32,000 nt of DNA from Paramicrosporidium saccamoebae KSL3 (Eukaryota > Fungi > Cryptomycota): positions 10,093 through 42,092 of the forward strand of contig MTSL01000142.1 in NCBI GenBank assembly GCA_002794465.1, given 5' to 3'. Under the pieces are notes generated by a model. It saw nothing but the letters and a program-made list of their open reading frames with translations, was not told where the DNA came from and did not search any database. Shown one piece after another: positions 3,527-32,000 of the stretch. Positions within the stretch are counted from its first letter, which is position 1; every line of letters begins with the position of its first letter. The translations under genes and the position numbers were made by a program.

Positions 3527-3562
3527 AACAAAAAGTGCGACTTCTGTGGATTGAACACAGGG

Positions 3563-3601
<39 letters not shown>

Positions 3602-3649
3602 AAGTCGCAACTGACAATGTAAAATTGTAATGTTGATATAAATTATTTT

Positions 3650-9553: not shown

Positions 9554-11145
9554 TCACCGCAGTAAACCCTCACGCCTGGCTTGCATGATTGCGGCGGATC
9601 GGATGGCTGACAGGATAAAGTATGTCATCATCAGCGCCAAAAACACATGCCAAACAGTACTAATCTTGTCCATTATCGGATCAGGCCGACGTTCTTGGAA
9701 TACAGCACGTTGGGTCAAGAGCCAGTCATGGAATGCATGTCCCCACGAAGGGAGGCGCGTTTTGACAAGAGTGATTGCTTGTTCCAGGTAATCTCGCGAA
9801 AATAGAAAAATGACAAACGACGTCTACAGATCAGTCATGATAGCAGGGCTGTACTTGAATTCCCGCCTTGATAATGGCCTTTCCGAGAATTGTGGCCAAG
9901 GCAAATGTGCAGAATGGAATCATGTAATATCCACAGGTAATTCCGGTCAAATCGAAAAATGGATTCGGAATCTACAAAATTCAGAGCACAAAAAGATGTA
10001 CCGATGCGCAGAGGAGGATACCAAAAAATCCAAGCCGAGTAACAGTCTGATACGAGGCCAACTGCAATGTCTCGAATAGCGTCTTTTTTCCCTTCTTCTT
10101 CGTGATTCTCTCGACAGTCTGCATCTCTCCACTTGCTTTTCCTGCCAGTGCAGCTAAAAGTTAGCCAGCCAGCGTAATAGTACATGCACGAGCAACAAGA
10201 TAAGGTGGGAGTTCGCCGATAGCAGTACCAAGCCCCCACGCAAAAGCCTCCCATTTAATCTTGTTTAGAATTGTCAAAAGAGTGACGTTGAGCTCTTCAG
10301 ACGGCTCGGTGGGACAGAGAAGACTATTGAGGCCGTACAGAGGGAAATCGGTCGATTTGCAAATATATGCAGCAGTAGTGACGCGAGCAATGAAGGGGCC
10401 GAGGAAGAGGAGGAATGTGTGTGCTCCGGTGCCAAGTCCTACCGAAGAGAGGATCCCCAGGACTACCCAGCGACCATACCACATGACTGCCTCTCGTACT
10501 GGTGCCAAATACGCCTGTTGAGGTCCGTCGAACAGGAATAGGGTGATAACGAGGAAAATGCAAACGACCACATTGGCCATAATGAGGGGCGAGTTGCGGG
10601 CCATGCCAGCTCCATCTTTTCCTAACGATACAGCGCATCTAAGTGCCAACATAATGGTCGTAATCGGGCTAGTCATGAATCCAATGTCCTCCGAGGTCAT
10701 TTGGGACGATGTCTTGCTCAGAGGCTGTTCTTTATGCTTAACTGGCGTCTTGGAGGGAGTTTTCCTTCGACCCGGGGAGACACTCAGTCCCTTGGGATTC
10801 TCCACAAACGGATTTGCCGCTGACTGAGCCTCCTGAAGACGCTGCACTAACGCTCCTTTGTTCCCGACCGGCGACATGCCCAGACTCGCAAGCTCATCCT
10901 TTAATTGGTTGACGCTCATCTTGGCGGGGCTCTCCGAACGTACAATAGTAGGTGGAGATGATCTACAAGTCAGTCACCCGAGGCACGTGCTACCGAGGAA
11001 ATGCTGGAAGCTCGGCCTCTTCCAAGCGCGCAATTAGCTCACTCTTCTTCCCCATAGGGGAGAGATTGCGATTACGAAGCTCGTCTTTGAGCTTGGTGAC
11101 GGTCCATGCGCCCATTTGGTATTGTGATTGAGGTGTTCCAGACAT
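9554..11145 (-). CDS. VMP1: VMP1 (vacuole membrane protein 1, DedA-type ER scramblase) with two N-terminal SAP domains (5 exons)
   Basis: VMP1 motifs [35 protein letters not shown] and [24 protein letters not shown] join across 30-31 nt introns. A 31-nt intron joins the upstream SAP exon ([28 protein letters not shown]) in frame to a second SAP ([28 protein letters not shown]). Confidence 0.88.
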
Positions 11146-11353
11146 TTCTGGTGGATTCAAAACGACGAAAAATGTGAGGCTTGTCTCACTACCTGAACGA
11201 GGTCCAATACCCCAGTTGGCGCCATATAAGGAGTGTATCCGATTGGCCGGCAAAGGAAGGTGGAGGACGGTGAAATGTATAGAGTAAATCAATGCACAAC
11301 TGCGTAGCGAGGGCCTGGTATTAGTGCTGTGTGGTGTTTCTACGACCTTTTTT

Positions 11354-24877: not shown

Positions 24878-25891
24878 TTATAAAAAATATTCGGGAGGAG
24901 GCTTCTTGGAAGGGACCACTGAAGCTTCCTGGGGAGCAGCTTCAAATAATTTAAATGAATGGTTCAGCTCGGAATCAACCACCATGATCGACGCAACGTT
25001 GCCGCATCGGTAACAATAGTTCGGTGCAGACCAAATGGTTACCAGAGTCTCGTCCCAAATCATCTTGTAGCCCTCCATGACCAGCTGATGGGCACGGGCA
25101 ATCATGCCAAGCCCGTTGTCGTGAAGAAACTTTTCTGCAACATCTGCGCCGAATTGGAAACCAGCTCCCCGGGGACTAAGACCCCAACCGACAATCTCTT
25201 CAGGATCGGACCAGAGCAAGTCACACATGGCTCCTTCGTGGGGTACCTCTCTCTTCCGGTCAATTTGACGGATCTGGTCCAAGGTATTGATGAGAGGAGA
25301 GAGACCGCCGTGGACAGCTAGGATCCGACCGTCAATAATGGCTGAAAGACTGAGATAGTCAAAGATGTCACAGCAATATCTCCACACGTTGGCGTTTCCG
25401 TATTTCCGGATACATTCGTCGTAAAAGCCGTATATCTGCGTAATCTGTCTGCTCTCATGGTTGCCCCTTATTAAGGTAATCCTACTCGGATAACGAACCT
25501 ATGGATTACCAAAGTACAATGGACGGACGTACTTTAAGGGCGAGGAGGAGGAGAAAGGTCTCGACACTATTGAAGCCGCGGTCGACAAAGTCGCCGAGGA
25601 AGAGGTAGTTGGTCTGTGGACACTCTCCACCGACTTTGAACAATTCCTTCAAGTCGTAGAATTGGCCGTGTATATCTCCGCATATCTACAAGCATTAGCA
25701 GACTTAAAATGGGTACAGTGACGGGTGCATCCACTCGCTGAACGTTGCTCTCCTCGACCAATATCTCACGTGCCAGTTGACACAGTTCTCGCACCTCTTC
25801 CTCCCCAATTAATTCACCATTTTTCAGCTGCTCCAGCACCCTACACCATGTGACGCAACTTTGGAGGACAATACCTGTCAAGGTGACTCAT
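24878..25891 (-). CDS. PPH3: Protein phosphatase 4 catalytic subunit (4 exons)
   Basis: GDIHGQF, GDFVDRG and RGNHE. PP4-type [19 protein letters not shown] and the C-terminal EYFL. Introns of 34, 31 and 34 nt. Confidence 0.93.
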
Positions 25892-25909: not shown

Positions 25910-28680
25910 ATGCGCCGATGGTTCGTCACTGCTAAGGAGCTAGCAGGGACACTCAATTTGCCCAAAACGACATTTCCGCAAAGGGTGGATTATGCAGCAG
26001 TGGAGGAGAGATACAGAAGTATCATATCGACAGAATTATACCAGGCACAGGTGGCGATCCGAGTTGGTCTGACTGTGGTAGCTCAATAAGGAGGGGCCTA
26101 CGTTTCTTATCCATGATGGGCCGCCCTTTGCCAATGGAAACCTCCACATTGGCCACGCCCTGAACAAGTTACTTAAGGATACCATTTTGAGGTCCAAAAT
26201 CGAAAAGGGCTATCGAGTAGAGTAACCATCTCGGCACTCTTTTTGATCCATAGATTCCGACCTGGATGGGACTGCCATGGTCTCCCCATTGAAATCAAGG
26301 CGCTTGCAAAGGCTCAAGGAAAATCCCTCACGCCGCTTCAGATCCGCAACATTTCTCAGCAATTTGCCCAAGATGCAATAAGCAGCCAAGCAGCAGAGAT
26401 GAAGAGATGGGGTTTGTTGGCTGACTATGAGCACCCGGTCCGTACCTTGGATCCAAGCTATGAGGCAGCCCAATTGCGAGTCTTTGGTCAGTTAGTGCAG
26501 CGAGGCTTGGTGTACGCTGACAAAAGACCGGTTTATTGGTCGCCTTCGTCAAGGACAGCGCTGGCAGAGGCTGAATTGGAGTATGTGGATGGTCACATTT
26601 CAAAAGCCTGTTTTGTAAAGTTTCCTATTGTGGGCACTTTGGATGAATATTTGCTGATTTGGACCACCACTCCATGGACAATCCCTGCAAATCAAGCGAT
26701 TGCAGTCAACCCAATGCTCAATTATGTACGTGTTAATGCGGGACGGGAAAAATACATTGTCGCCCAATCCAGGATGGATGATTTAAAGGACATGTTTGAA
26801 ACTGCACATGCCGCTGAAGCAGTCTCAATTGAAAGTCTATTGAACACTAAATACAAAAATCTATCAGGGAACTGCAATCCAGTGGTAGTTGGCGATTTTG
26901 TCACAAATGACGTTGGCACTGGGCTAGTCCATCTATCTCCTGCATATGGACAGGATGACTTTGCCACGTGTCGAAAGCATGGAATAGTTGAGCAGGAGAT
27001 TGTTGACATGAATGGAATGTACACTGACGCTGCTCCAGCAGAGTTGGCAGGAAAAAGCATCACGGATGTGGACGTACAGCTAGAGTTGTTGCGGACAAAA
27101 GGCCTATTGCTCCATAGCTACGACCATCGCCACCGATATCCATATGACTGGCGCACCAAAAAGCCTGTCATCCAAATGGCCACACGCCAATGGTTTATCC
27201 GAACTGGCCCCATATTGGCTGAACTCCATGCAGCTTTGGAACCGGTGCAGTTCCTACCCGCATCGGGAAAGAAGCGTCTAGCAAACATGTTGGATGCACG
27301 GCAGGAATGGTGCATCTCGCGACAGAGAGTGTGGGGTGTCCCAATTCCAGTGTTTTACGACAAGGAAACCGATTCTCCCCTGTTGGACGTTGCTGTAATT
27401 GAACATTTTGCCAATCTGGTAGCTCAAAATGGTACGAATGCGTGGTGGGAACTAGACAATATCGATTTGCTGCCTGACCAGTTTAAACATCTAGCCGATA
27501 GACTTGTACGTGGAAATGACACTATTGACGTTTGGTTTGATAGTGGCACCTTTTGGAGCTCCACTACCGACCCATCCGATATCTACATTGAGGGAACAGA
27601 TCAGCATCGTGGATGGTTCCAGTCGTCACTTATCACCTCGGTCGTGTCTCGTGGGATATCGCCATTTAAAAAGCTAGTCTCCCACGGGTTTGTGCTGGAC
27701 GAGCGGGGCAATAAAATGTCAAAATCAGTGGGCAATGTCATCGCACCGGATGAAATCATCAAGGGCACGGGAAAGCTTCCAAGGGGAACTGATGTTCTTC
27801 GTCTCTGGGCCGTCTCTTCAAATTTCCTAAGCGATGTGACAGTGGGGCCGATTTTGTTGGAGCGCACTGTCGAACTCCATCAAAAGTTGCGGAATACTTT
27901 TAGATTCATTTTGGGAAACTTGGTGGCGTTTCCTGGATCATTAAAATGGGAAGAACTAAAGGATGTTGATCGTTTGGTCCTGTCCAAATGCGAAACCATC
28001 AAGCAGCAGGTACAGCAAAAATATGACGAACTGGATTTCAGTGGTGGCATTGCTGTATTGCAAGCGTTTGTCATTGAGGATCTCTCGGCTTTTTACTTTG
28101 ATGTGATTAAGAATCGGCTGTATATAGACACTGCCCATTCCTTGGGTCGCCAAAGTGCACAAACTGCGCTGGGTCAGATTGCATTACGGCTGTTGTCTTT
28201 ATTAAGACCGGTTTCACCATATCTCTGTGCAGAAGTCACAGCGCATCTTCCCAACAGAAAAGAAATGCCGATTACTAACTCTGACGATAGTTTGGCACGG
28301 TTGATGCAGGTTCGGTCTGCAATGAGAATAGAATTGAACCGTCTCAGAAAAGAGCAGTAATTCGCCATGTTGAATGTGGTCTTGATGTTTATAGATTGTT
28401 GGAATCGACATATCAGGCGGACATTGAACTCTCCGACACAGAGGCGGGCTGGGACGATTTGGCAGAGATATTCATGGTCAATTCTGTCCGTCGACATTAT
28501 GGTAACCAACCTGCATTGTCAGTAGTGGAGATTGAGGGATTGGGACTAGTTCGTATATTGAGGGCAGAGCATGGAAAATGTCCCCGATGCTGGATGTATC
28601 GCTTGGAGACTGACGAGGAGATTTGCAGACCCTGCAATAGGGTTCTCAACCTTGGCGAGGTGTTGGCTAATGAGAATTAA
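25910..28680 (+). CDS. ISM1: Isoleucyl-tRNA synthetase, mitochondrial/bacterial type (4 exons)
   Basis: [68 protein letters not shown] and a C-terminal CPRCW..C..C zinc finger. Introns of 31, 32 and 38 nt. Confidence 0.95.
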
Positions 28681-30265: not shown

Positions 30266-30952
30266 ATGTGGCCGTTTGATACTTCGGCCTGGTACTTGCG
30301 ACCTGTCAGTGTGCTGGAGGAATGCAAAGACTTTGAGCAGCAGCGTCACGAAGCGTGTGATTTTATTGCCAAAGTGGCACGTCGGCTCAACTTTCCTTAC
30401 CGAACAATCGCCAGCGCGCAGTTGTACTTTCATCTCTTCTTTTCGCTCCATCCTCACACTGATTATCCCTCTATGGATATTGCCCTCACCACGCTACTCG
30501 TCGCATCAAAAGCAGAGGAGACTTTTCAGCGAATACAACAAATTTTGGTAGCAGCCTACCGGACCCTAAACCCACAAGCAGAAGGTAAAGTGCGCATCAT
30601 TGAAGAACACAGGGTGCGGGTCACTCAGTACGAGCATCTCGTTTTGGAAGCCATTGACTACAACTTTGCGGTGCGTCATGCCCACGAAGTCTTAGCAAGG
30701 ATAGGGGCTGAACTAGACTTGACGTCAGAGTCTATGAGCAGTGCCTTTCGGTTTTGTAAGGATTGCTACTACACGCCAATTGTGTTGTGTTATCCTCCCG
30801 AGTTTATTGCAGCGGCAGCAATAATTTGGATGCGAACAGCTGAGGGGAGCAAGACGGAAGAGATGCGCGTACTAGAAAAGCTTGTAGGATCGAGTCAGGA
30901 AAAGATTCTAAAGATTATCGACTTTGTAAAGCAATCGAATAAAGCAATGTAG
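30266..30952 (+). CDS. Transcriptional cyclin (cyclin K/T/Ctk2-like)
   Basis: Cyclin box ..RTIASAQLYFHLFF..LLVASKAEET and YEHLVLEAIDYNF..H; second fold CYPPEFIAAAAI. Confidence 0.8.
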   Translation: MWPFDTSAWYLRPVSVLEECKDFEQQRHEACDFIAKVARRLNFPYRTIASAQLYFHLFFSLHPHTDYPSMDIALTTLLVASKAEETFQRIQQILVAAYRTLNPQAEGKVRIIEEHRVRVTQYEHLVLEAIDYNFAVRHAHEVLARIGAELDLTSESMSSAFRFCKDCYYTPIVLCYPPEFIAAAAIIWMRTAEGSKTEEMRVLEKLVGSSQEKILKIIDFVKQSNKAM

Positions 30953-30960
30953 ATACGATG

Positions 30961-31036
30961 CAGGATACATGATACATGATACATGATACAGGATACAGGA
31001 TACATGATATAGGATATAGGATATAGGATACAGGTA
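30961..31036. repeat. Heptamer microsatellite (C/T)A(T/G)GATA, 10 full copies, between convergent cyclin and SAS-6 stops
   Basis: CAGGATA, CATGATA and TAGGATA units in exact 7-nt register from 30961. Confidence 0.95.
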
Positions 31037-31066: not shown

Positions 31067-32000
31067 TTATTGGAGCTGTTCCGGGAGGGTGGAGGAAGAG
31101 GAGCTATGCGGCTCGCCAATCTTTGTCTTTCCCATCCACGTTTCTGGGGACAATCTCGGACTCTGTGGGAAGAGTATTGGGTTACTCATGTATTTGCCAC
31201 CATTGCGACCCAACATCCTGCTTATGGAATCCTCGTTGATTTGATGATGGAGCCACTCAATCACCTTTTCATTCGCCTCCACCAGTTTCCTACTTTCCGC
31301 CAGCTCAACAGCAAGCCGATCCCGTTCCGCATGCGTCTCGCCCAATTGGCCCTTCAACTCACCCACCTCTTTCCGAAGCGTATCGTATGAACCCTGTGTC
31401 TCCTTTCCAATCCTATCGACTTGTTTAAGGGCACTTTCTGCAGAACGAGCACGATGTCGCAGCGACTTTACCTCATCTTGGAGTTTCCGAATAATTTCGT
31501 TGGCCTTGTTAATGTCGCTTTGTATTCCGTGGGATGTGCTATGACCGCTACCAAGACGCTGACGAAGATCATTCACTTCGGCCTCCAATGCCGTCTTTTG
31601 GTTTATCAGTTGTTGATTCTGAGTCTCCAACCACCGCAACTATGGCATTAGTTGATCTTTGCGTGTACCTGTTCGTCCAATGTTGTGGATGGCGGCATAT
31701 ATGGCATGGAAGGTTGTTTCCCCAAGTCGAGCCTACCGACACCATACTCTTGTGGTCTATTCAATGGAACATTTCCCATTTTTAGTCCTTCAATTTCATC
31801 CTTGTAATGACGGACAACACTCCCAAGGTGCCTCTTTAGGTCCTGTTCGGATGGCTGCGTAAACCGGAGTACCAAGTGTACAATCTGTCGAAAGGAGGTA
31901 GATTCCAAAATTGAGAGCGCCGCTCCCGCCGGCCTCCCCGTTCCAGTGTCCTCGGCTTGAACTTGCAATGTGGTCGCAAATCTATCAATTAGCTACGCTA
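31067..32000 (-). CDS. SAS6: SAS-6 centriole cartwheel protein, 3' part (5' end outside window)
   Basis: Head-domain end LSILESTSFRQIVHLVLRF..SEQDLKRHL resembles SAS-6 LNVVETNPFKHLTHLSLKL..NDVEIKKFL. Coil motifs KANEIIRKLQ and ESRKLVEANEKVIEWL match. A 29-nt intron lies at 31640-31668, and an acceptor with branch CTAAT at about 31982. Confidence 0.82.

What the first reader, a model, noticed from the sequence alone, without database searches (positions are those of the whole stretch)
31067..32000. SAS-6 retained, with a shortened and interrupted coiled coil
Seen: the head-to-head oligomerisation Phe (TSF, equivalent to human NPF) is kept. A Pro-rich break of about 35 aa follows the head, and the distance from that Phe to the conserved I.WL motif is about 204 aa, versus roughly 345 in human as I recall. 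Established: SAS-6 builds the 9-fold centriole cartwheel, its coiled coil forms the spokes, and it is lost in non-flagellated fungi and microsporidia. Inference: if this is a non-flagellated rozellid, it keeps a reduced centriole or a SAS-6-based spindle-pole structure, an intermediate stage of centriole loss.
Basis: partly seen in the sequence, partly recalled or inferred. Interest (0 to 1): 0.7.

Follow-up and report, generated by a model that had tools for sequence, protein, structure and literature searches.

The report
Shortened, hinged SAS-6 in Paramicrosporidium
A flagellum-less relative of microsporidia still carries a conserved gene for SAS-6, the protein that sets the nine-fold shape of centrioles, but its normally fixed-length spoke is about 40% shorter and broken by a flexible hinge, which suggests that a centriole-derived structure outlived the flagellum.

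Summary
The window is part of Paramicrosporidium saccamoebae contig MTSL01000142.1. Its minus strand from 31067 to 32000 carries the last two exons of a four-exon, 412-aa SAS-6 gene. Most of the head domain lies about 400 nt beyond the window edge. The spliced head matches Pfam SAS-6_N (81 bits against a cut-off of 25) and solved SAS-6 heads (E 4e-20). Phe148 sits in the position of zebrafish F131. GenBank annotates only a 212-aa headless "hypothetical protein".

In canonical opisthokont SAS-6 (chytrids, a lamprey, a sponge, a choanoflagellate), the spacing from this Phe to the I.WL motif is almost always 344 aa, and the coiled coil has no proline. Here the spacing is 201 aa. A predicted 33-residue non-helical Pro/Gly linker follows the first 23 helical residues. 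The distal module is kept: 81 aa against the usual 88, one heptad less.

About 25 environmental relatives share this architecture, and the two large relative contigs examined share gene order. The gene is therefore under selection.

Published screens found no IFT or axonemal dynein genes in this organism. The inference of a reduced centriole or spindle-pole scaffold is plausible but untested.

Shortened SAS-6 also turned up in the non-flagellated fungi Calcarisporiella and Jimgerdemannia.

The parts
31067..31639 (-). SAS-6 exon 4 (v2 residues 223-412 plus stop). It covers most of helix 2, a short break, the long distal helix and the tail.
   Evidence: The ORF is and the spliced model. It is 93% identical to GenBank PSACC_02094.
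31640..31668 (-). Intron 3, 29 nt: GTACACGCAAAGATCAACTAATGCCATAG (GT..AG, CTAAT near the 3' end).
   Evidence: Frame shift between the two ORFs. Relatives read 'LRWLETQNQQL' / 'LRSLEMQNQQL' straight after the junction. The GenBank model instead skips 15 codons.
31669..31981 (-). SAS-6 exon 3 (v2 residues 118/119-222). It covers the last head strands, Phe148, the first helix and the Pro/Gly linker.
   Evidence: The junction 'EDRP|LFATTLQ' matches the intron-less 'EDRPAFSATLQ' in relative L004.
31982..32000 (-). 3' part of intron 2 (31 nt in all, cut by the window end). Exons 1-2, which hold the rest of the head and the PISA region, lie beyond the window at L001 1851-2018 and 2048-2232.
   Evidence: The head scores Pfam SAS-6_N 81.4 bits.
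31891..31893 (-). Codon of Phe148, the head-to-head oligomerisation residue (equivalent to F131 in zebrafish and human).
   Evidence: Aligned to the Phe of 'ETNAF' in 2y3v. Phe occupies this anchor in 91 of 91 family members measured.
31780..31848 (-). First coiled-coil segment, 23 residues (163-185, EQDLKRHLGSVVRHYKDEIEGLK).
   Evidence: AlphaFold2 helix, fragment residues 45-67, with block-mean pLDDT of about 74-89. It aligns with the start of the coiled coil in 2y3w.
31681..31779 (-). Linker of 33 residues (186-218), rich in Pro and Gly, that interrupts the coiled coil.
   Evidence: AlphaFold2 predicts it non-helical with block-mean pLDDT of roughly 40-60. Between F+15 and KANEII there are 6 Pro and 9 Gly, against 0 Pro in 108 of 115 canonical SAS-6.
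31702..31734 (-). Conserved linear motif RLDLGKQPSMP inside the linker. It is specific to this clade.
   Evidence: RIDLSRQPSMP, GIDLMRQPSMP, RFDAAKQPSMP, RVDFTRQPSMP and RVDLARQPLAP occur in relatives that are 40-58% identical overall. Chytrids lack it.
31205..31531 (-). Distal long helix of 109 residues (259-367). It holds KANEIIRKLQDEVKSL (31490-31507 = KANEII) and VIEWLHHQINED (31250-31261 = IEWL).
   Evidence: AlphaFold2 helix with pLDDT 96-98. The spacing between the two motifs is 88 aa in 83 of 91 SAS-6 and 81 here, one heptad less.
31067..31204 (-). Disordered C-terminal tail (368-412) with clade-conserved motifs RLSPETWMGK and a Ser run, followed by the stop codon.
   Evidence: pLDDT below 50. 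The motifs are conserved in P0003, P0006, P0007, P0009 and others.

Best explanation
**What is shown**
- The gene is the Paramicrosporidium saccamoebae orthologue of the centriole cartwheel protein SAS-6. It is intact, has four exons and encodes 412 aa.
- It is kept under purifying selection in a whole clade of Paramicrosporidium-like organisms.
- It retains the complete head domain with the Phe that inserts into the neighbouring head.
- It retains a first short coiled-coil segment.
- It retains the distal coiled-coil module between the KANEII and I.WL motifs, whose length is fixed at about 88 residues across the family.
- It retains a motif-bearing tail.
- The proximal and middle spoke is different. 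Canonical SAS-6 has a proline-free stretch fixed at about 255 residues. Here it is about 120 residues, including a 33-residue non-helical hinge that carries a new conserved motif.

**What is inferred**
- The protein probably still dimerises through its helices and oligomerises head to head.
- Its spoke would hold about 166 helical residues, roughly 25 nm, against roughly 50 nm for the canonical form.
- Such a spoke can no longer act as a rigid ruler reaching a canonical microtubule-triplet wall.
- The organism lacks the flagellar gene set. The most likely role is therefore scaffolding a reduced, centriole-derived structure at the spindle pole or nuclear MTOC.
- The conserved distal coiled coil and tail would recruit it there. 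This is the region that in other systems binds STIL, CEP135 and pericentrin.
For: **Identity**
- Pfam SAS-6_N 81.4 bits, E 9e-23.
- Zebrafish, human, Chlamydomonas and Leishmania SAS-6 heads in the PDB, E 4e-20 to 6e-10, with the Phe aligned.
- The distal motifs are shared with chytrid proteins that NCBI names SAS-6.

**Selection**
- About 25 environmental homologues at 30-66% identity keep the same architecture.
- The gene order SAS-6 / cyclin-like / ADH / tRNA synthetase / Metallophos / SURF1 is conserved in two independent metagenome relatives.
- An intron position is shared with a relative.

**Shortening and interruption**
- F to I.WL is 201 aa here, against 344 in 46 of 91 representatives and 333-348 in 72 of 91.
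- F to KANEII is 252 or 256 in 103 of 143 representatives, against 120 here.
- Prolines in this stretch: 0 in 108 of 115 canonical proteins, 6 here.
- The AlphaFold2 map shows helices of 23, 34 and 109 residues with a 33-residue low-confidence linker.

**No flagellum**
- Quandt et al. 2017 (PMC5701793), main text and Supplementary file 2.

**Plausibility of spindle-pole recruitment**
- Animal SAS-6 expressed in fission yeast is recruited to the spindle pole body by Pcp1/pericentrin.
- That recruitment requires the SAS-6 coiled-coil half (PMC6559791).
Against: - There is no localisation, expression or ultrastructural data for this protein.
- No partner gene (SAS-4/CPAP, CEP135, STIL, PLK4, POC1, delta/epsilon tubulin, pericentrin) could be searched in this genome with the tools at hand.
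- The published flagellar screen used the predicted proteome. That proteome mis-models genes with 29-31-nt introns, this one included. The screen's SAS-6 row is zero even for flagellates, so it cannot exclude retained centriole core genes.
- Oligomerisation and ring symmetry are inferred from sequence only. The residues of the pocket that receives the Phe were not checked.
- Whether the environmental relatives have flagella is unknown.
Confidence: 0.6

Rival explanations
1. Paramicrosporidium keeps genuine, perhaps small or singlet-walled, centrioles without any flagellum. The short SAS-6 builds a smaller but otherwise ordinary nine-fold cartwheel, as in organisms with small centrioles.
For: The head, Phe148, the distal module and the tail are all conserved. 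Sanchytrids show that holomycotan centrioles can be reduced to nine singlets while part of the toolkit is retained (PMC8371127).
Against: A 33-residue flexible, proline-rich hinge sits three heptads from the hub. That is hard to reconcile with a rigid spoke that transmits nine-fold geometry. The length of the proximal segment varies from 96 to 181 residues among relatives, which a ruler would not tolerate. No centriole has been reported, and no partner genes were surveyed.
Confidence: 0.2
2. SAS-6 has been redeployed to a structure unrelated to the spindle pole, for example the polar-filament or anchoring apparatus of the spore. This would resemble the SAS-6-like protein that sits in the apicomplexan conoid.
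For: A precedent exists for a SAS-6 head protein working in an invasion apparatus (PMC3697468). The linker and the tail carry new clade-specific conserved motifs, which could be new partner sites.
Against: This is the SAS-6 orthologue, with its coiled coil and distal motifs, not SAS6L. Classical microsporidia have polar tubes, yet none appeared among the homologues recovered (only the top 150 were inspected). Calcarisporiella and Jimgerdemannia keep short SAS-6 without any polar filament.
Confidence: 0.1
3. The organism has an undiscovered flagellated stage and an ordinary basal body. The short SAS-6 is then only a lineage quirk.
For: The genome annotation is imperfect: this very gene is truncated, and the published screen could not detect SAS-6 in any taxon.
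Against: There were zero hits for about 60 flagellar proteins, including the very large dynein heavy chains and seven IFT proteins, all of which Rozella scores positive for. The authors and the describers of the organism saw no flagellated stage.
Confidence: 0.05
4. The gene is a decaying relic on its way to loss, or the short interrupted coil is a gene-model artefact (an unspliced intron or missed exons).
For: The coiled coil has lost about 140 residues, and the proximal segment varies in length among relatives.
Against: The reading frame and splice sites are intact. The head and distal module are strongly conserved in about 25 relatives, and there is a conserved motif inside the linker. Only about 800 nt of contiguous DNA lie between the Phe codon and the stop. 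AlphaFold2 gives pLDDT 96-98 for the distal helix.
Confidence: 0.03

Closest known systems
Canonical SAS-6 (human SASS6, zebrafish SAS-6, Chlamydomonas Bld12p, chytrid SAS-6)
   Same: SAS-6_N head with the PISA region. The Phe at the head-head interface. A coiled coil that starts right after the head. The distal motifs KANEII..LQ and VIEWLH.Q.NED about 88 residues apart. A disordered C-terminal tail.
   Different: Canonical proteins are 580-700 aa with an F to I.WL spacing of 344 and a proline-free coil. This one is 412 aa with a spacing of 201, a 33-residue Pro/Gly hinge after three heptads, a second 6-residue break, one heptad missing from the distal module, and no terminal '..S-N-Y-F' motif.
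Environmental Paramicrosporidium-like short SAS-6 clade (P0002-P0021, P0024, P0030, P0032, P0071, P0087, P0102)
   Same: The same architecture: a proximal segment of 96-181 residues with 4-12 prolines, a distal module of 87-88 residues, and the R.DL.RQPSMP and RLSPE.WLGK motifs in the closest members. The gene neighbourhood is the same in L002 and L004.
   Different: These are unnamed metagenome sequences, mostly split by gene callers. P. saccamoebae and P0003 have lost one further heptad.
Short SAS-6 of non-flagellated Mucoromycota (Calcarisporiella thermophila P0096; Jimgerdemannia flammicorona P0077/P0196)
   Same: SAS-6_N head (90 and 91 bits), the Phe, the distal motifs, and a shortened proximal coil (F to KANEII 151 and 174; F to I.WL 239 in Calcarisporiella), all in lineages without flagella.
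   Different: The coil is shortened but not interrupted (0 prolines). The sequences resemble chytrid SAS-6 (KGNEII, VTLQQEKLLDE), so the shortening was independent. For Jimgerdemannia, whose assemblies come from sporocarps, contamination was not excluded.
SAS6L (SAS-6-like, apicomplexan conoid protein)
   Same: It shares the SAS-6 head fold and is a case of a non-centriolar use of that head (PMC3697468).
   Different: SAS6L lacks the coiled-coil tail altogether. The protein here keeps the SAS-6-specific distal coiled-coil motifs, so it is SAS-6 proper.
Caenorhabditis elegans SAS-6 (own knowledge, not tested here)
   Same: A naturally shorter SAS-6 (492 aa) that serves a small centriole with singlet microtubules.
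   Different: It has Ile instead of Phe at the interface and an uninterrupted coil. It works in an organism with cilia and the full SAS-4/SAS-5/ZYG-1 pathway.

Membership tests
SAS-6 | N-terminal head domain (Pfam SAS-6_N, PF16531, including the PISA region) | tested here: met
   81.4 bits against a cut-off of 25, E 9e-23, on the spliced head. PDB SAS-6 heads from four species at E 4e-20 to 6e-10. Only about 30 of these residues lie inside the window.
SAS-6 | Hydrophobic residue (Phe131 in vertebrates) that mediates head-to-head oligomerisation | tested here: met
   Phe148 aligns with the Phe of 'ETNAF' in 2y3v. Phe occupies this position in 91 of 91 family members. The receiving pocket was not examined.
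SAS-6 | Parallel dimeric coiled coil that starts directly after the head | tested here: inconclusive
   AlphaFold2 monomer helices at 163-185, 219-252 and 259-367. A crude heptad score is positive for the distal part. Dimerisation itself cannot be tested here.
SAS-6 | Opisthokont-conserved distal coiled-coil motifs (K[AG]NEII..LQ and VI.WL..Q.NE) 88 residues apart | tested here: met
   Both motifs are present. The spacing is 81, which is 88 minus one heptad. The spacing is 88 in 83 of 91 members.
SAS-6 | Uninterrupted spoke of canonical length (F to I.WL about 344 aa, no proline) | tested here: not met
   201 aa, with 6 Pro and 9 Gly and a 33-residue non-helical linker.
SAS-6 | Disordered C-terminal tail | tested here: met
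   Residues 368-412 have pLDDT below 50.
SAS-6 | Assembly into nine-fold rings or cartwheels | not testable with these tools
   Needs recombinant protein and EM or AFM.
SAS-6 | Co-occurrence with the centriole core module (SAS-4/CPAP, CEP135/Bld10, STIL/Ana2, PLK4, POC1) | not tested
SAS6L | SAS-6 head without a coiled-coil tail | tested here: not met
   The protein has about 166 predicted helical residues and the SAS-6 distal motifs.

The most novel reading that the evidence does not exclude
SAS-6 outlives the flagellum repeatedly in Holomycota and their relatives: the Paramicrosporidium-like clade, Calcarisporiella and Endogonales in Mucoromycota, and possibly the ichthyosporean Amoebidium. 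Each time, the otherwise invariant 344-residue spoke ruler is released while the head and the 88-residue distal module stay fixed. This would point to an ancestral, cilium-independent job for SAS-6 at the spindle pole, for example pericentrin-dependent licensing or templating of MTOC duplication. It would also supply living intermediates between centriolar centrosomes and spindle pole bodies.
Probability: 0.3. Interest if true: 0.8.

Novelty: new variant of a known kind. Interest (0 to 1): 0.65.

Why it matters
**The accepted rule.** SAS-6 and the other centriole-assembly proteins are thought to occur only where centrioles and cilia occur. Among fungi they have been reported only in chytrids (PMC6559791, citing Carvalho-Santos 2010 and Hodges 2010).

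**What this gene shows.**
- An intact, selected SAS-6 exists in an organism whose published gene content rules out a flagellum.
- GenBank annotates it only as a headless "hypothetical protein".
- No paper in the searchable library mentions SAS-6 together with Paramicrosporidium.

**The measurable signature.** The spoke behaves as a ruler. Its length is 344 residues in many lineages, from chytrids to a lamprey. The constraint is lifted in this clade, and in a different way in two non-flagellated Mucoromycota.

**What becomes testable.** How a centriolar centrosome turned into an acentriolar spindle-pole structure is an old question. This gene gives a candidate protein to localise, a domain-by-domain prediction of what was kept and what was released, and several independent lineages to compare.

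Tried and rejected
- **Exact look-up of the neighbouring 323-aa ADH ORF.** It found nothing. The called gene starts at a later Met (319 aa).
- **Pfam on the window-only fragment.** It gave only generic coiled-coil noise and no SAS-6_N, because the window holds about 30 head residues. The gene had to be completed from the contig.
- **First splice model (intron 1 = 38 nt, 409 aa).** It was replaced by a 29-nt intron (412 aa). This restores 'VLE' as in chytrid 'KVLEIQLTD' and raises the Pfam and PDB scores.
- **Third word-index homologue search, with a head-only alignment.** It returned only short unnamed fragments. No Rozella, Mitosporidium or microsporidian entry was seen, so the question of when the shortening happened relative to flagellum loss stays open.
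- **Structure prediction of the full 412-aa model.** Only the window-encoded 294 residues were modelled.
- **Home-made heptad score.** It separates long forms from short ones (265-324 against 99-169 heptad-like residues) but is too crude for boundaries. The AlphaFold2 secondary structure was used instead.
- **Regex for GTA..CTAAY..AG mini-introns in the window.** The pattern is not enriched over shuffles. It lists four other candidates of 29-34 nt but proves nothing.
- **Rejected readings.**
  - An unspliced intron as the origin of the Pro-rich break: the break is conserved in frame.
  - SAS6L: a coiled coil is present.
  - Host or contaminant origin: the contig has PSACC gene models, synteny with relatives, and fungal-type best hits.
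Full report
**Where the window comes from**

The partial protein read from the window finds GenBank PSACC_02094 of Paramicrosporidium saccamoebae (93% identity). That protein is encoded on contig MTSL01000142.1 of assembly GCA_002794465.1. The reverse complement of the window matches the fetched locus L001 with 0 mismatches over the 10,934-nt overlap. Window position w corresponds to L001 position 34245-w.

**Gene structure**

- The gene lies on the minus strand. The window holds exon 4 (31067-31639), a 29-nt intron (31640-31668), exon 3 (31669-31981) and the 3' part of a 31-nt intron that is cut by the window end.
- Two further exons lie about 400 nt beyond the window (L001 1851-2018 and 2048-2232).
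- All three introns are GT..AG and 29-31 nt long, with a CTAAT- or CATAAT-like element near the 3' end.
- The junctions are supported by relatives:
  - 'EDRP|LFATTLQ' matches the uninterrupted 'EDRPAFSATLQ' in relative L004.
  - 'DEQ|LRWLETQNQQL' matches 'LRSLEMQNQQL' and 'IRWLETQNALL'.
  - Intron 1 sits at the same place in L004.
- My first choice for the intron-1 acceptor gave 409 aa. The acceptor 9 nt upstream gives 412 aa and restores 'RRVLEVRLSD', as in chytrid 'KVLEIQLTD'. It raises the Pfam score from 78.0 to 81.4 bits and the 2y3w score from 69.8 to 75.8 bits. Residue numbers below follow this 412-aa model.
- GenBank's model is a 212-aa "hypothetical protein". It starts inside the linker, skips 15 codons at intron 3 and lacks the head. 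One database source names it after an autophagy protein, on coiled-coil similarity only.

**Is it SAS-6?**

Yes.
- The spliced head scores 81.4 bits on Pfam SAS-6_N against a cut-off of 25 (E 9e-23).
- It matches solved SAS-6 heads from zebrafish (E 4e-20), human, Chlamydomonas and Leishmania.
- Phe148, in 'ESTSF' (codon 31891-31893), aligns with the interface Phe of zebrafish 'ETNAF'.
- The distal coiled coil carries 'KANEIIRKLQDEVKSL' and 'LVEANEKVIEWLHHQINED'. Chytrid proteins that NCBI names SAS-6 carry 'KGNEIIRKLQ.DLK' and 'NHVIEWLHKQLNEDA'.
- It is therefore the SAS-6 orthologue and not the tail-less paralogue SAS6L (PMC3697468).
- The window fragment alone gives no SAS-6_N hit, because only about 30 head residues are inside it.

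**How unusual is the coiled coil?**

I built anchor HMMs for the Phe region, the KANEII motif and the I.WL motif. I then measured spacings in the proteins found by two word-index searches and one exhaustive profile search. The profile search gave 459 proteins at E<=1e-30, of which the top 150 were inspected.

| Measure | Canonical SAS-6 | P. saccamoebae |
|---|---|---|
| F to I.WL | 344 in 46 of 91; 340 in 11; 72 of 91 within 333-348 | 201 |
| F to KANEII | exactly 256 (63) or 252 (40) in 103 of 143 | 120 |
| KANEII to I.WL | 88 in 83 of 91 | 81 (one heptad less) |
| Prolines, F+15 to KANEII | none in 108 of 115 | 6 Pro, 9 Gly |

- The 344 spacing was seen in 8 of 9 chytrids (the ninth is 345), the blastoclad Sorochytrium, a lamprey, the sponge Amphimedon, the choanoflagellate Salpingoeca macrocollata and the ichthyosporean Chromosphaera. 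The spoke is thus a length-invariant, proline-free ruler across opisthokonts.
- AlphaFold2 on the window-encoded 294 residues, with 21 homologues as alignment, gives the following map:
  - the last head strands;
  - a helix at 163-185 (23 aa);
  - a non-helical stretch at 186-218 (33 aa, block-mean pLDDT of roughly 40-60);
  - a helix at 219-252 (34 aa);
  - a 6-residue break;
  - a helix at 259-367 (109 aa, pLDDT 96-98);
  - a disordered tail at 368-412.
- That totals about 166 helical residues. At about 0.15 nm per residue (own knowledge), the spoke would be about 25 nm, against about 50 nm for the canonical form.
The break follows a three-heptad first helix, not the head itself.

**Is it an artefact or a relic?**

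No.
- The linker is kept in frame in relatives. Inside otherwise variable low-complexity sequence it holds a conserved motif: RLDLGKQPSMP here, and RIDLSRQPSMP, GIDLMRQPSMP, RFDAAKQPSMP, RVDFTRQPSMP and RVDLARQPLAP elsewhere.
- About 25 environmental homologues at 30-66% identity share the architecture. Their proximal segment is 96-181 residues with 4-12 prolines, and their distal module is 87-88 residues.
- The tail motifs 'RLSPE.W(L/M)GK' and a Ser run are also conserved.
- Two independent metagenome contigs (ENA ERZ27237304; JGI 3300037657) carry the gene in the same neighbourhood as in P. saccamoebae: SAS-6, a small gene on the opposite strand (cyclin-like in P. saccamoebae), ADH, class-I tRNA synthetase, Metallophos, SURF1. 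Both have complete heads.
- The variant is therefore a selected trait of a Paramicrosporidium-like clade.
- The pattern is informative. The head, the first helix, the distal module and the tail are constrained. The proximal and middle spoke has lost both its length and its rigidity.

**Does the organism have a flagellum?**

- The genome paper searched for flagellar genes and concluded that P. saccamoebae cannot make a flagellum (PMC5701793).
- In its Supplementary file 2 the P. saccamoebae column (KSL3) is zero for IFT52/57/80/88/122/140/172, ODA1/2/4/6/9, IDA4/7, hydin, PF16, radial spoke protein, PACRG and RIB72. Rozella is positive for all of these except IFT57 and IFT140.
- Two cautions apply:
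  - The screen used the predicted proteome at 1e-20.
  - Its Sas-6 row is zero for every taxon, flagellates included, so it could not have seen this gene and says nothing about the centriole core.
- I found no paper that mentions Paramicrosporidium together with SAS-6, and none on SAS-6 in Rozella or microsporidia beyond the SAS6L paper.
- Galindo et al. 2021 scored 61 flagellar proteins across Holomycota. The supplements held as text do not mention SAS-6.

**Mechanism**

Shown: an intact SAS-6 with interface Phe, helices, distal module and tail, under selection, in a genome without flagellar genes.

Inferred:
- It still forms coiled-coil dimers that associate head to head.
- Its spokes are half-length and hinged three heptads from the hub, so they cannot act as the rigid ruler of a canonical cartwheel.
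- The retained distal coil and tail are the part used for recruitment. The coiled coil is sufficient to bring human SAS-6 to centrioles, through STIL and CEP135.
- The coiled-coil half is also required for Pcp1/pericentrin-dependent recruitment of animal SAS-6 to the fission-yeast spindle pole body (PMC6559791).
- The most likely reading is a reduced, centriole-derived scaffold at the spindle pole or nuclear MTOC.
- A true small centriole without a flagellum is the main rival. A redeployment to the spore's invasion apparatus is a weaker one.
- None of these can be separated without a survey of partner genes and microscopy.

**Unexpected side result**

- The exhaustive search also recovered SAS-6_N proteins from fungi regarded as non-flagellated:
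  - Calcarisporiella thermophila: 473 aa, complete, on a 673-kb scaffold, F to I.WL 239.
  - Jimgerdemannia flammicorona: two assemblies, partial models, F to KANEII 174.
- It also recovered one from the ichthyosporean Amoebidium parasiticum (F to I.WL 293).
- Their coils are shortened but proline-free and chytrid-like in sequence. The shortening was therefore independent of the one in the Paramicrosporidium clade.
It also strengthens the wider idea that SAS-6 can persist after flagellum loss with a relaxed spoke.
- I found no paper linking SAS-6 with these taxa.
- Two short fish entries (Notothenia, Coregonus) are most likely exon-skipped gene models.

**Verdict**

The identification as SAS-6 is secure. 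I rate it a new variant of a known kind, of above-average interest to people who work on centrosome evolution.

Noticed in passing
window 31067-31790 (GenBank PSACC_02094) and L001 1851-3178: The deposited gene model is a 212-aa 'hypothetical protein'. It starts inside the linker, skips 15 codons at the 29-nt intron and lacks the whole head. One source names it after an autophagy protein on coiled-coil similarity alone. SAS-6 is therefore invisible in the published proteome.
   Followed up: yes
window 31640-31668 and 31982-32000; L001 2019-2047: All three introns of the gene are ultrashort (29, 31 and 29 nt), GT..AG, with CTAAT or CATAAT 5-9 nt before the acceptor. Similar candidates occur at window 25686-25716, 11315-11343, 10154-10183 and 26482-26515 (all on the minus strand). 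The genome paper's main text never mentions introns, so such introns may cause wider mis-annotation in this genome.
   Followed up: partly
proteins P0096, P0077/P0196, P0134: SAS-6_N proteins with shortened but uninterrupted coiled coils are deposited for the non-flagellated fungi Calcarisporiella thermophila and Jimgerdemannia flammicorona, and for the ichthyosporean Amoebidium parasiticum. This runs against the usual statement that non-flagellated fungi lack SAS-6.
   Followed up: partly
SAS-6 family at large: The SAS-6 spoke behaves as a near-invariant ruler. Phe to I.WL is 344 aa in many lineages from chytrids to a lamprey, sponge and choanoflagellate. F to KANEII is 252 or 256 in 103 of 143 proteins, and KANEII to I.WL is 88 in 83 of 91. 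There is no proline in 108 of 115.
   Followed up: yes
L001, L002, L004/L005: The gene order SAS-6 / small opposite-strand gene (cyclin-like in P. saccamoebae) / ADH / class-I tRNA synthetase / Metallophos / SURF1 is conserved between P. saccamoebae and two metagenome contigs. Upstream, Sdh_cyt, Dus and Peptidase_M24 are shared between the two metagenome contigs. Uncultured Paramicrosporidium relatives with large contigs (up to 140 kb) therefore exist in public metagenomes.
   Followed up: partly
window 30957-31034: An 11-copy heptanucleotide microsatellite (GATACAG)n fills the space between the convergent 3' ends of the cyclin-like gene (30266-30952, +) and SAS-6.
   Followed up: no
alignment A2, C-terminal columns: Chytrid SAS-6 proteins end in a conserved '..K-S-N-Y-F' motif. 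Some short-clade members end in 'PPDHF' or 'SIENF'. P. saccamoebae ends in 'LPEQLQ' without the aromatic residue. The role of this terminal motif is unknown to me.
   Followed up: no
PMC5701793, Supplementary file 2: In the published table, P. saccamoebae has 0 hits to the dynein heavy-chain queries (ODA2/ODA4), where yeasts score 1 (presumably cytoplasmic dynein). This suggests that cytoplasmic dynein heavy chain may be absent or unannotated as well.
   Followed up: no
window 3535-3608 (minus strand): A tRNA-Phe (GAA) gene is the only tRNA in the window.
   Followed up: no
L001 1139-1807 (outside the window, just upstream of SAS-6): A 222-aa gene with only a weak E3_binding match (E 0.015) ends 44 nt before the SAS-6 start codon, so the SAS-6 promoter region is very short.
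   Followed up: no
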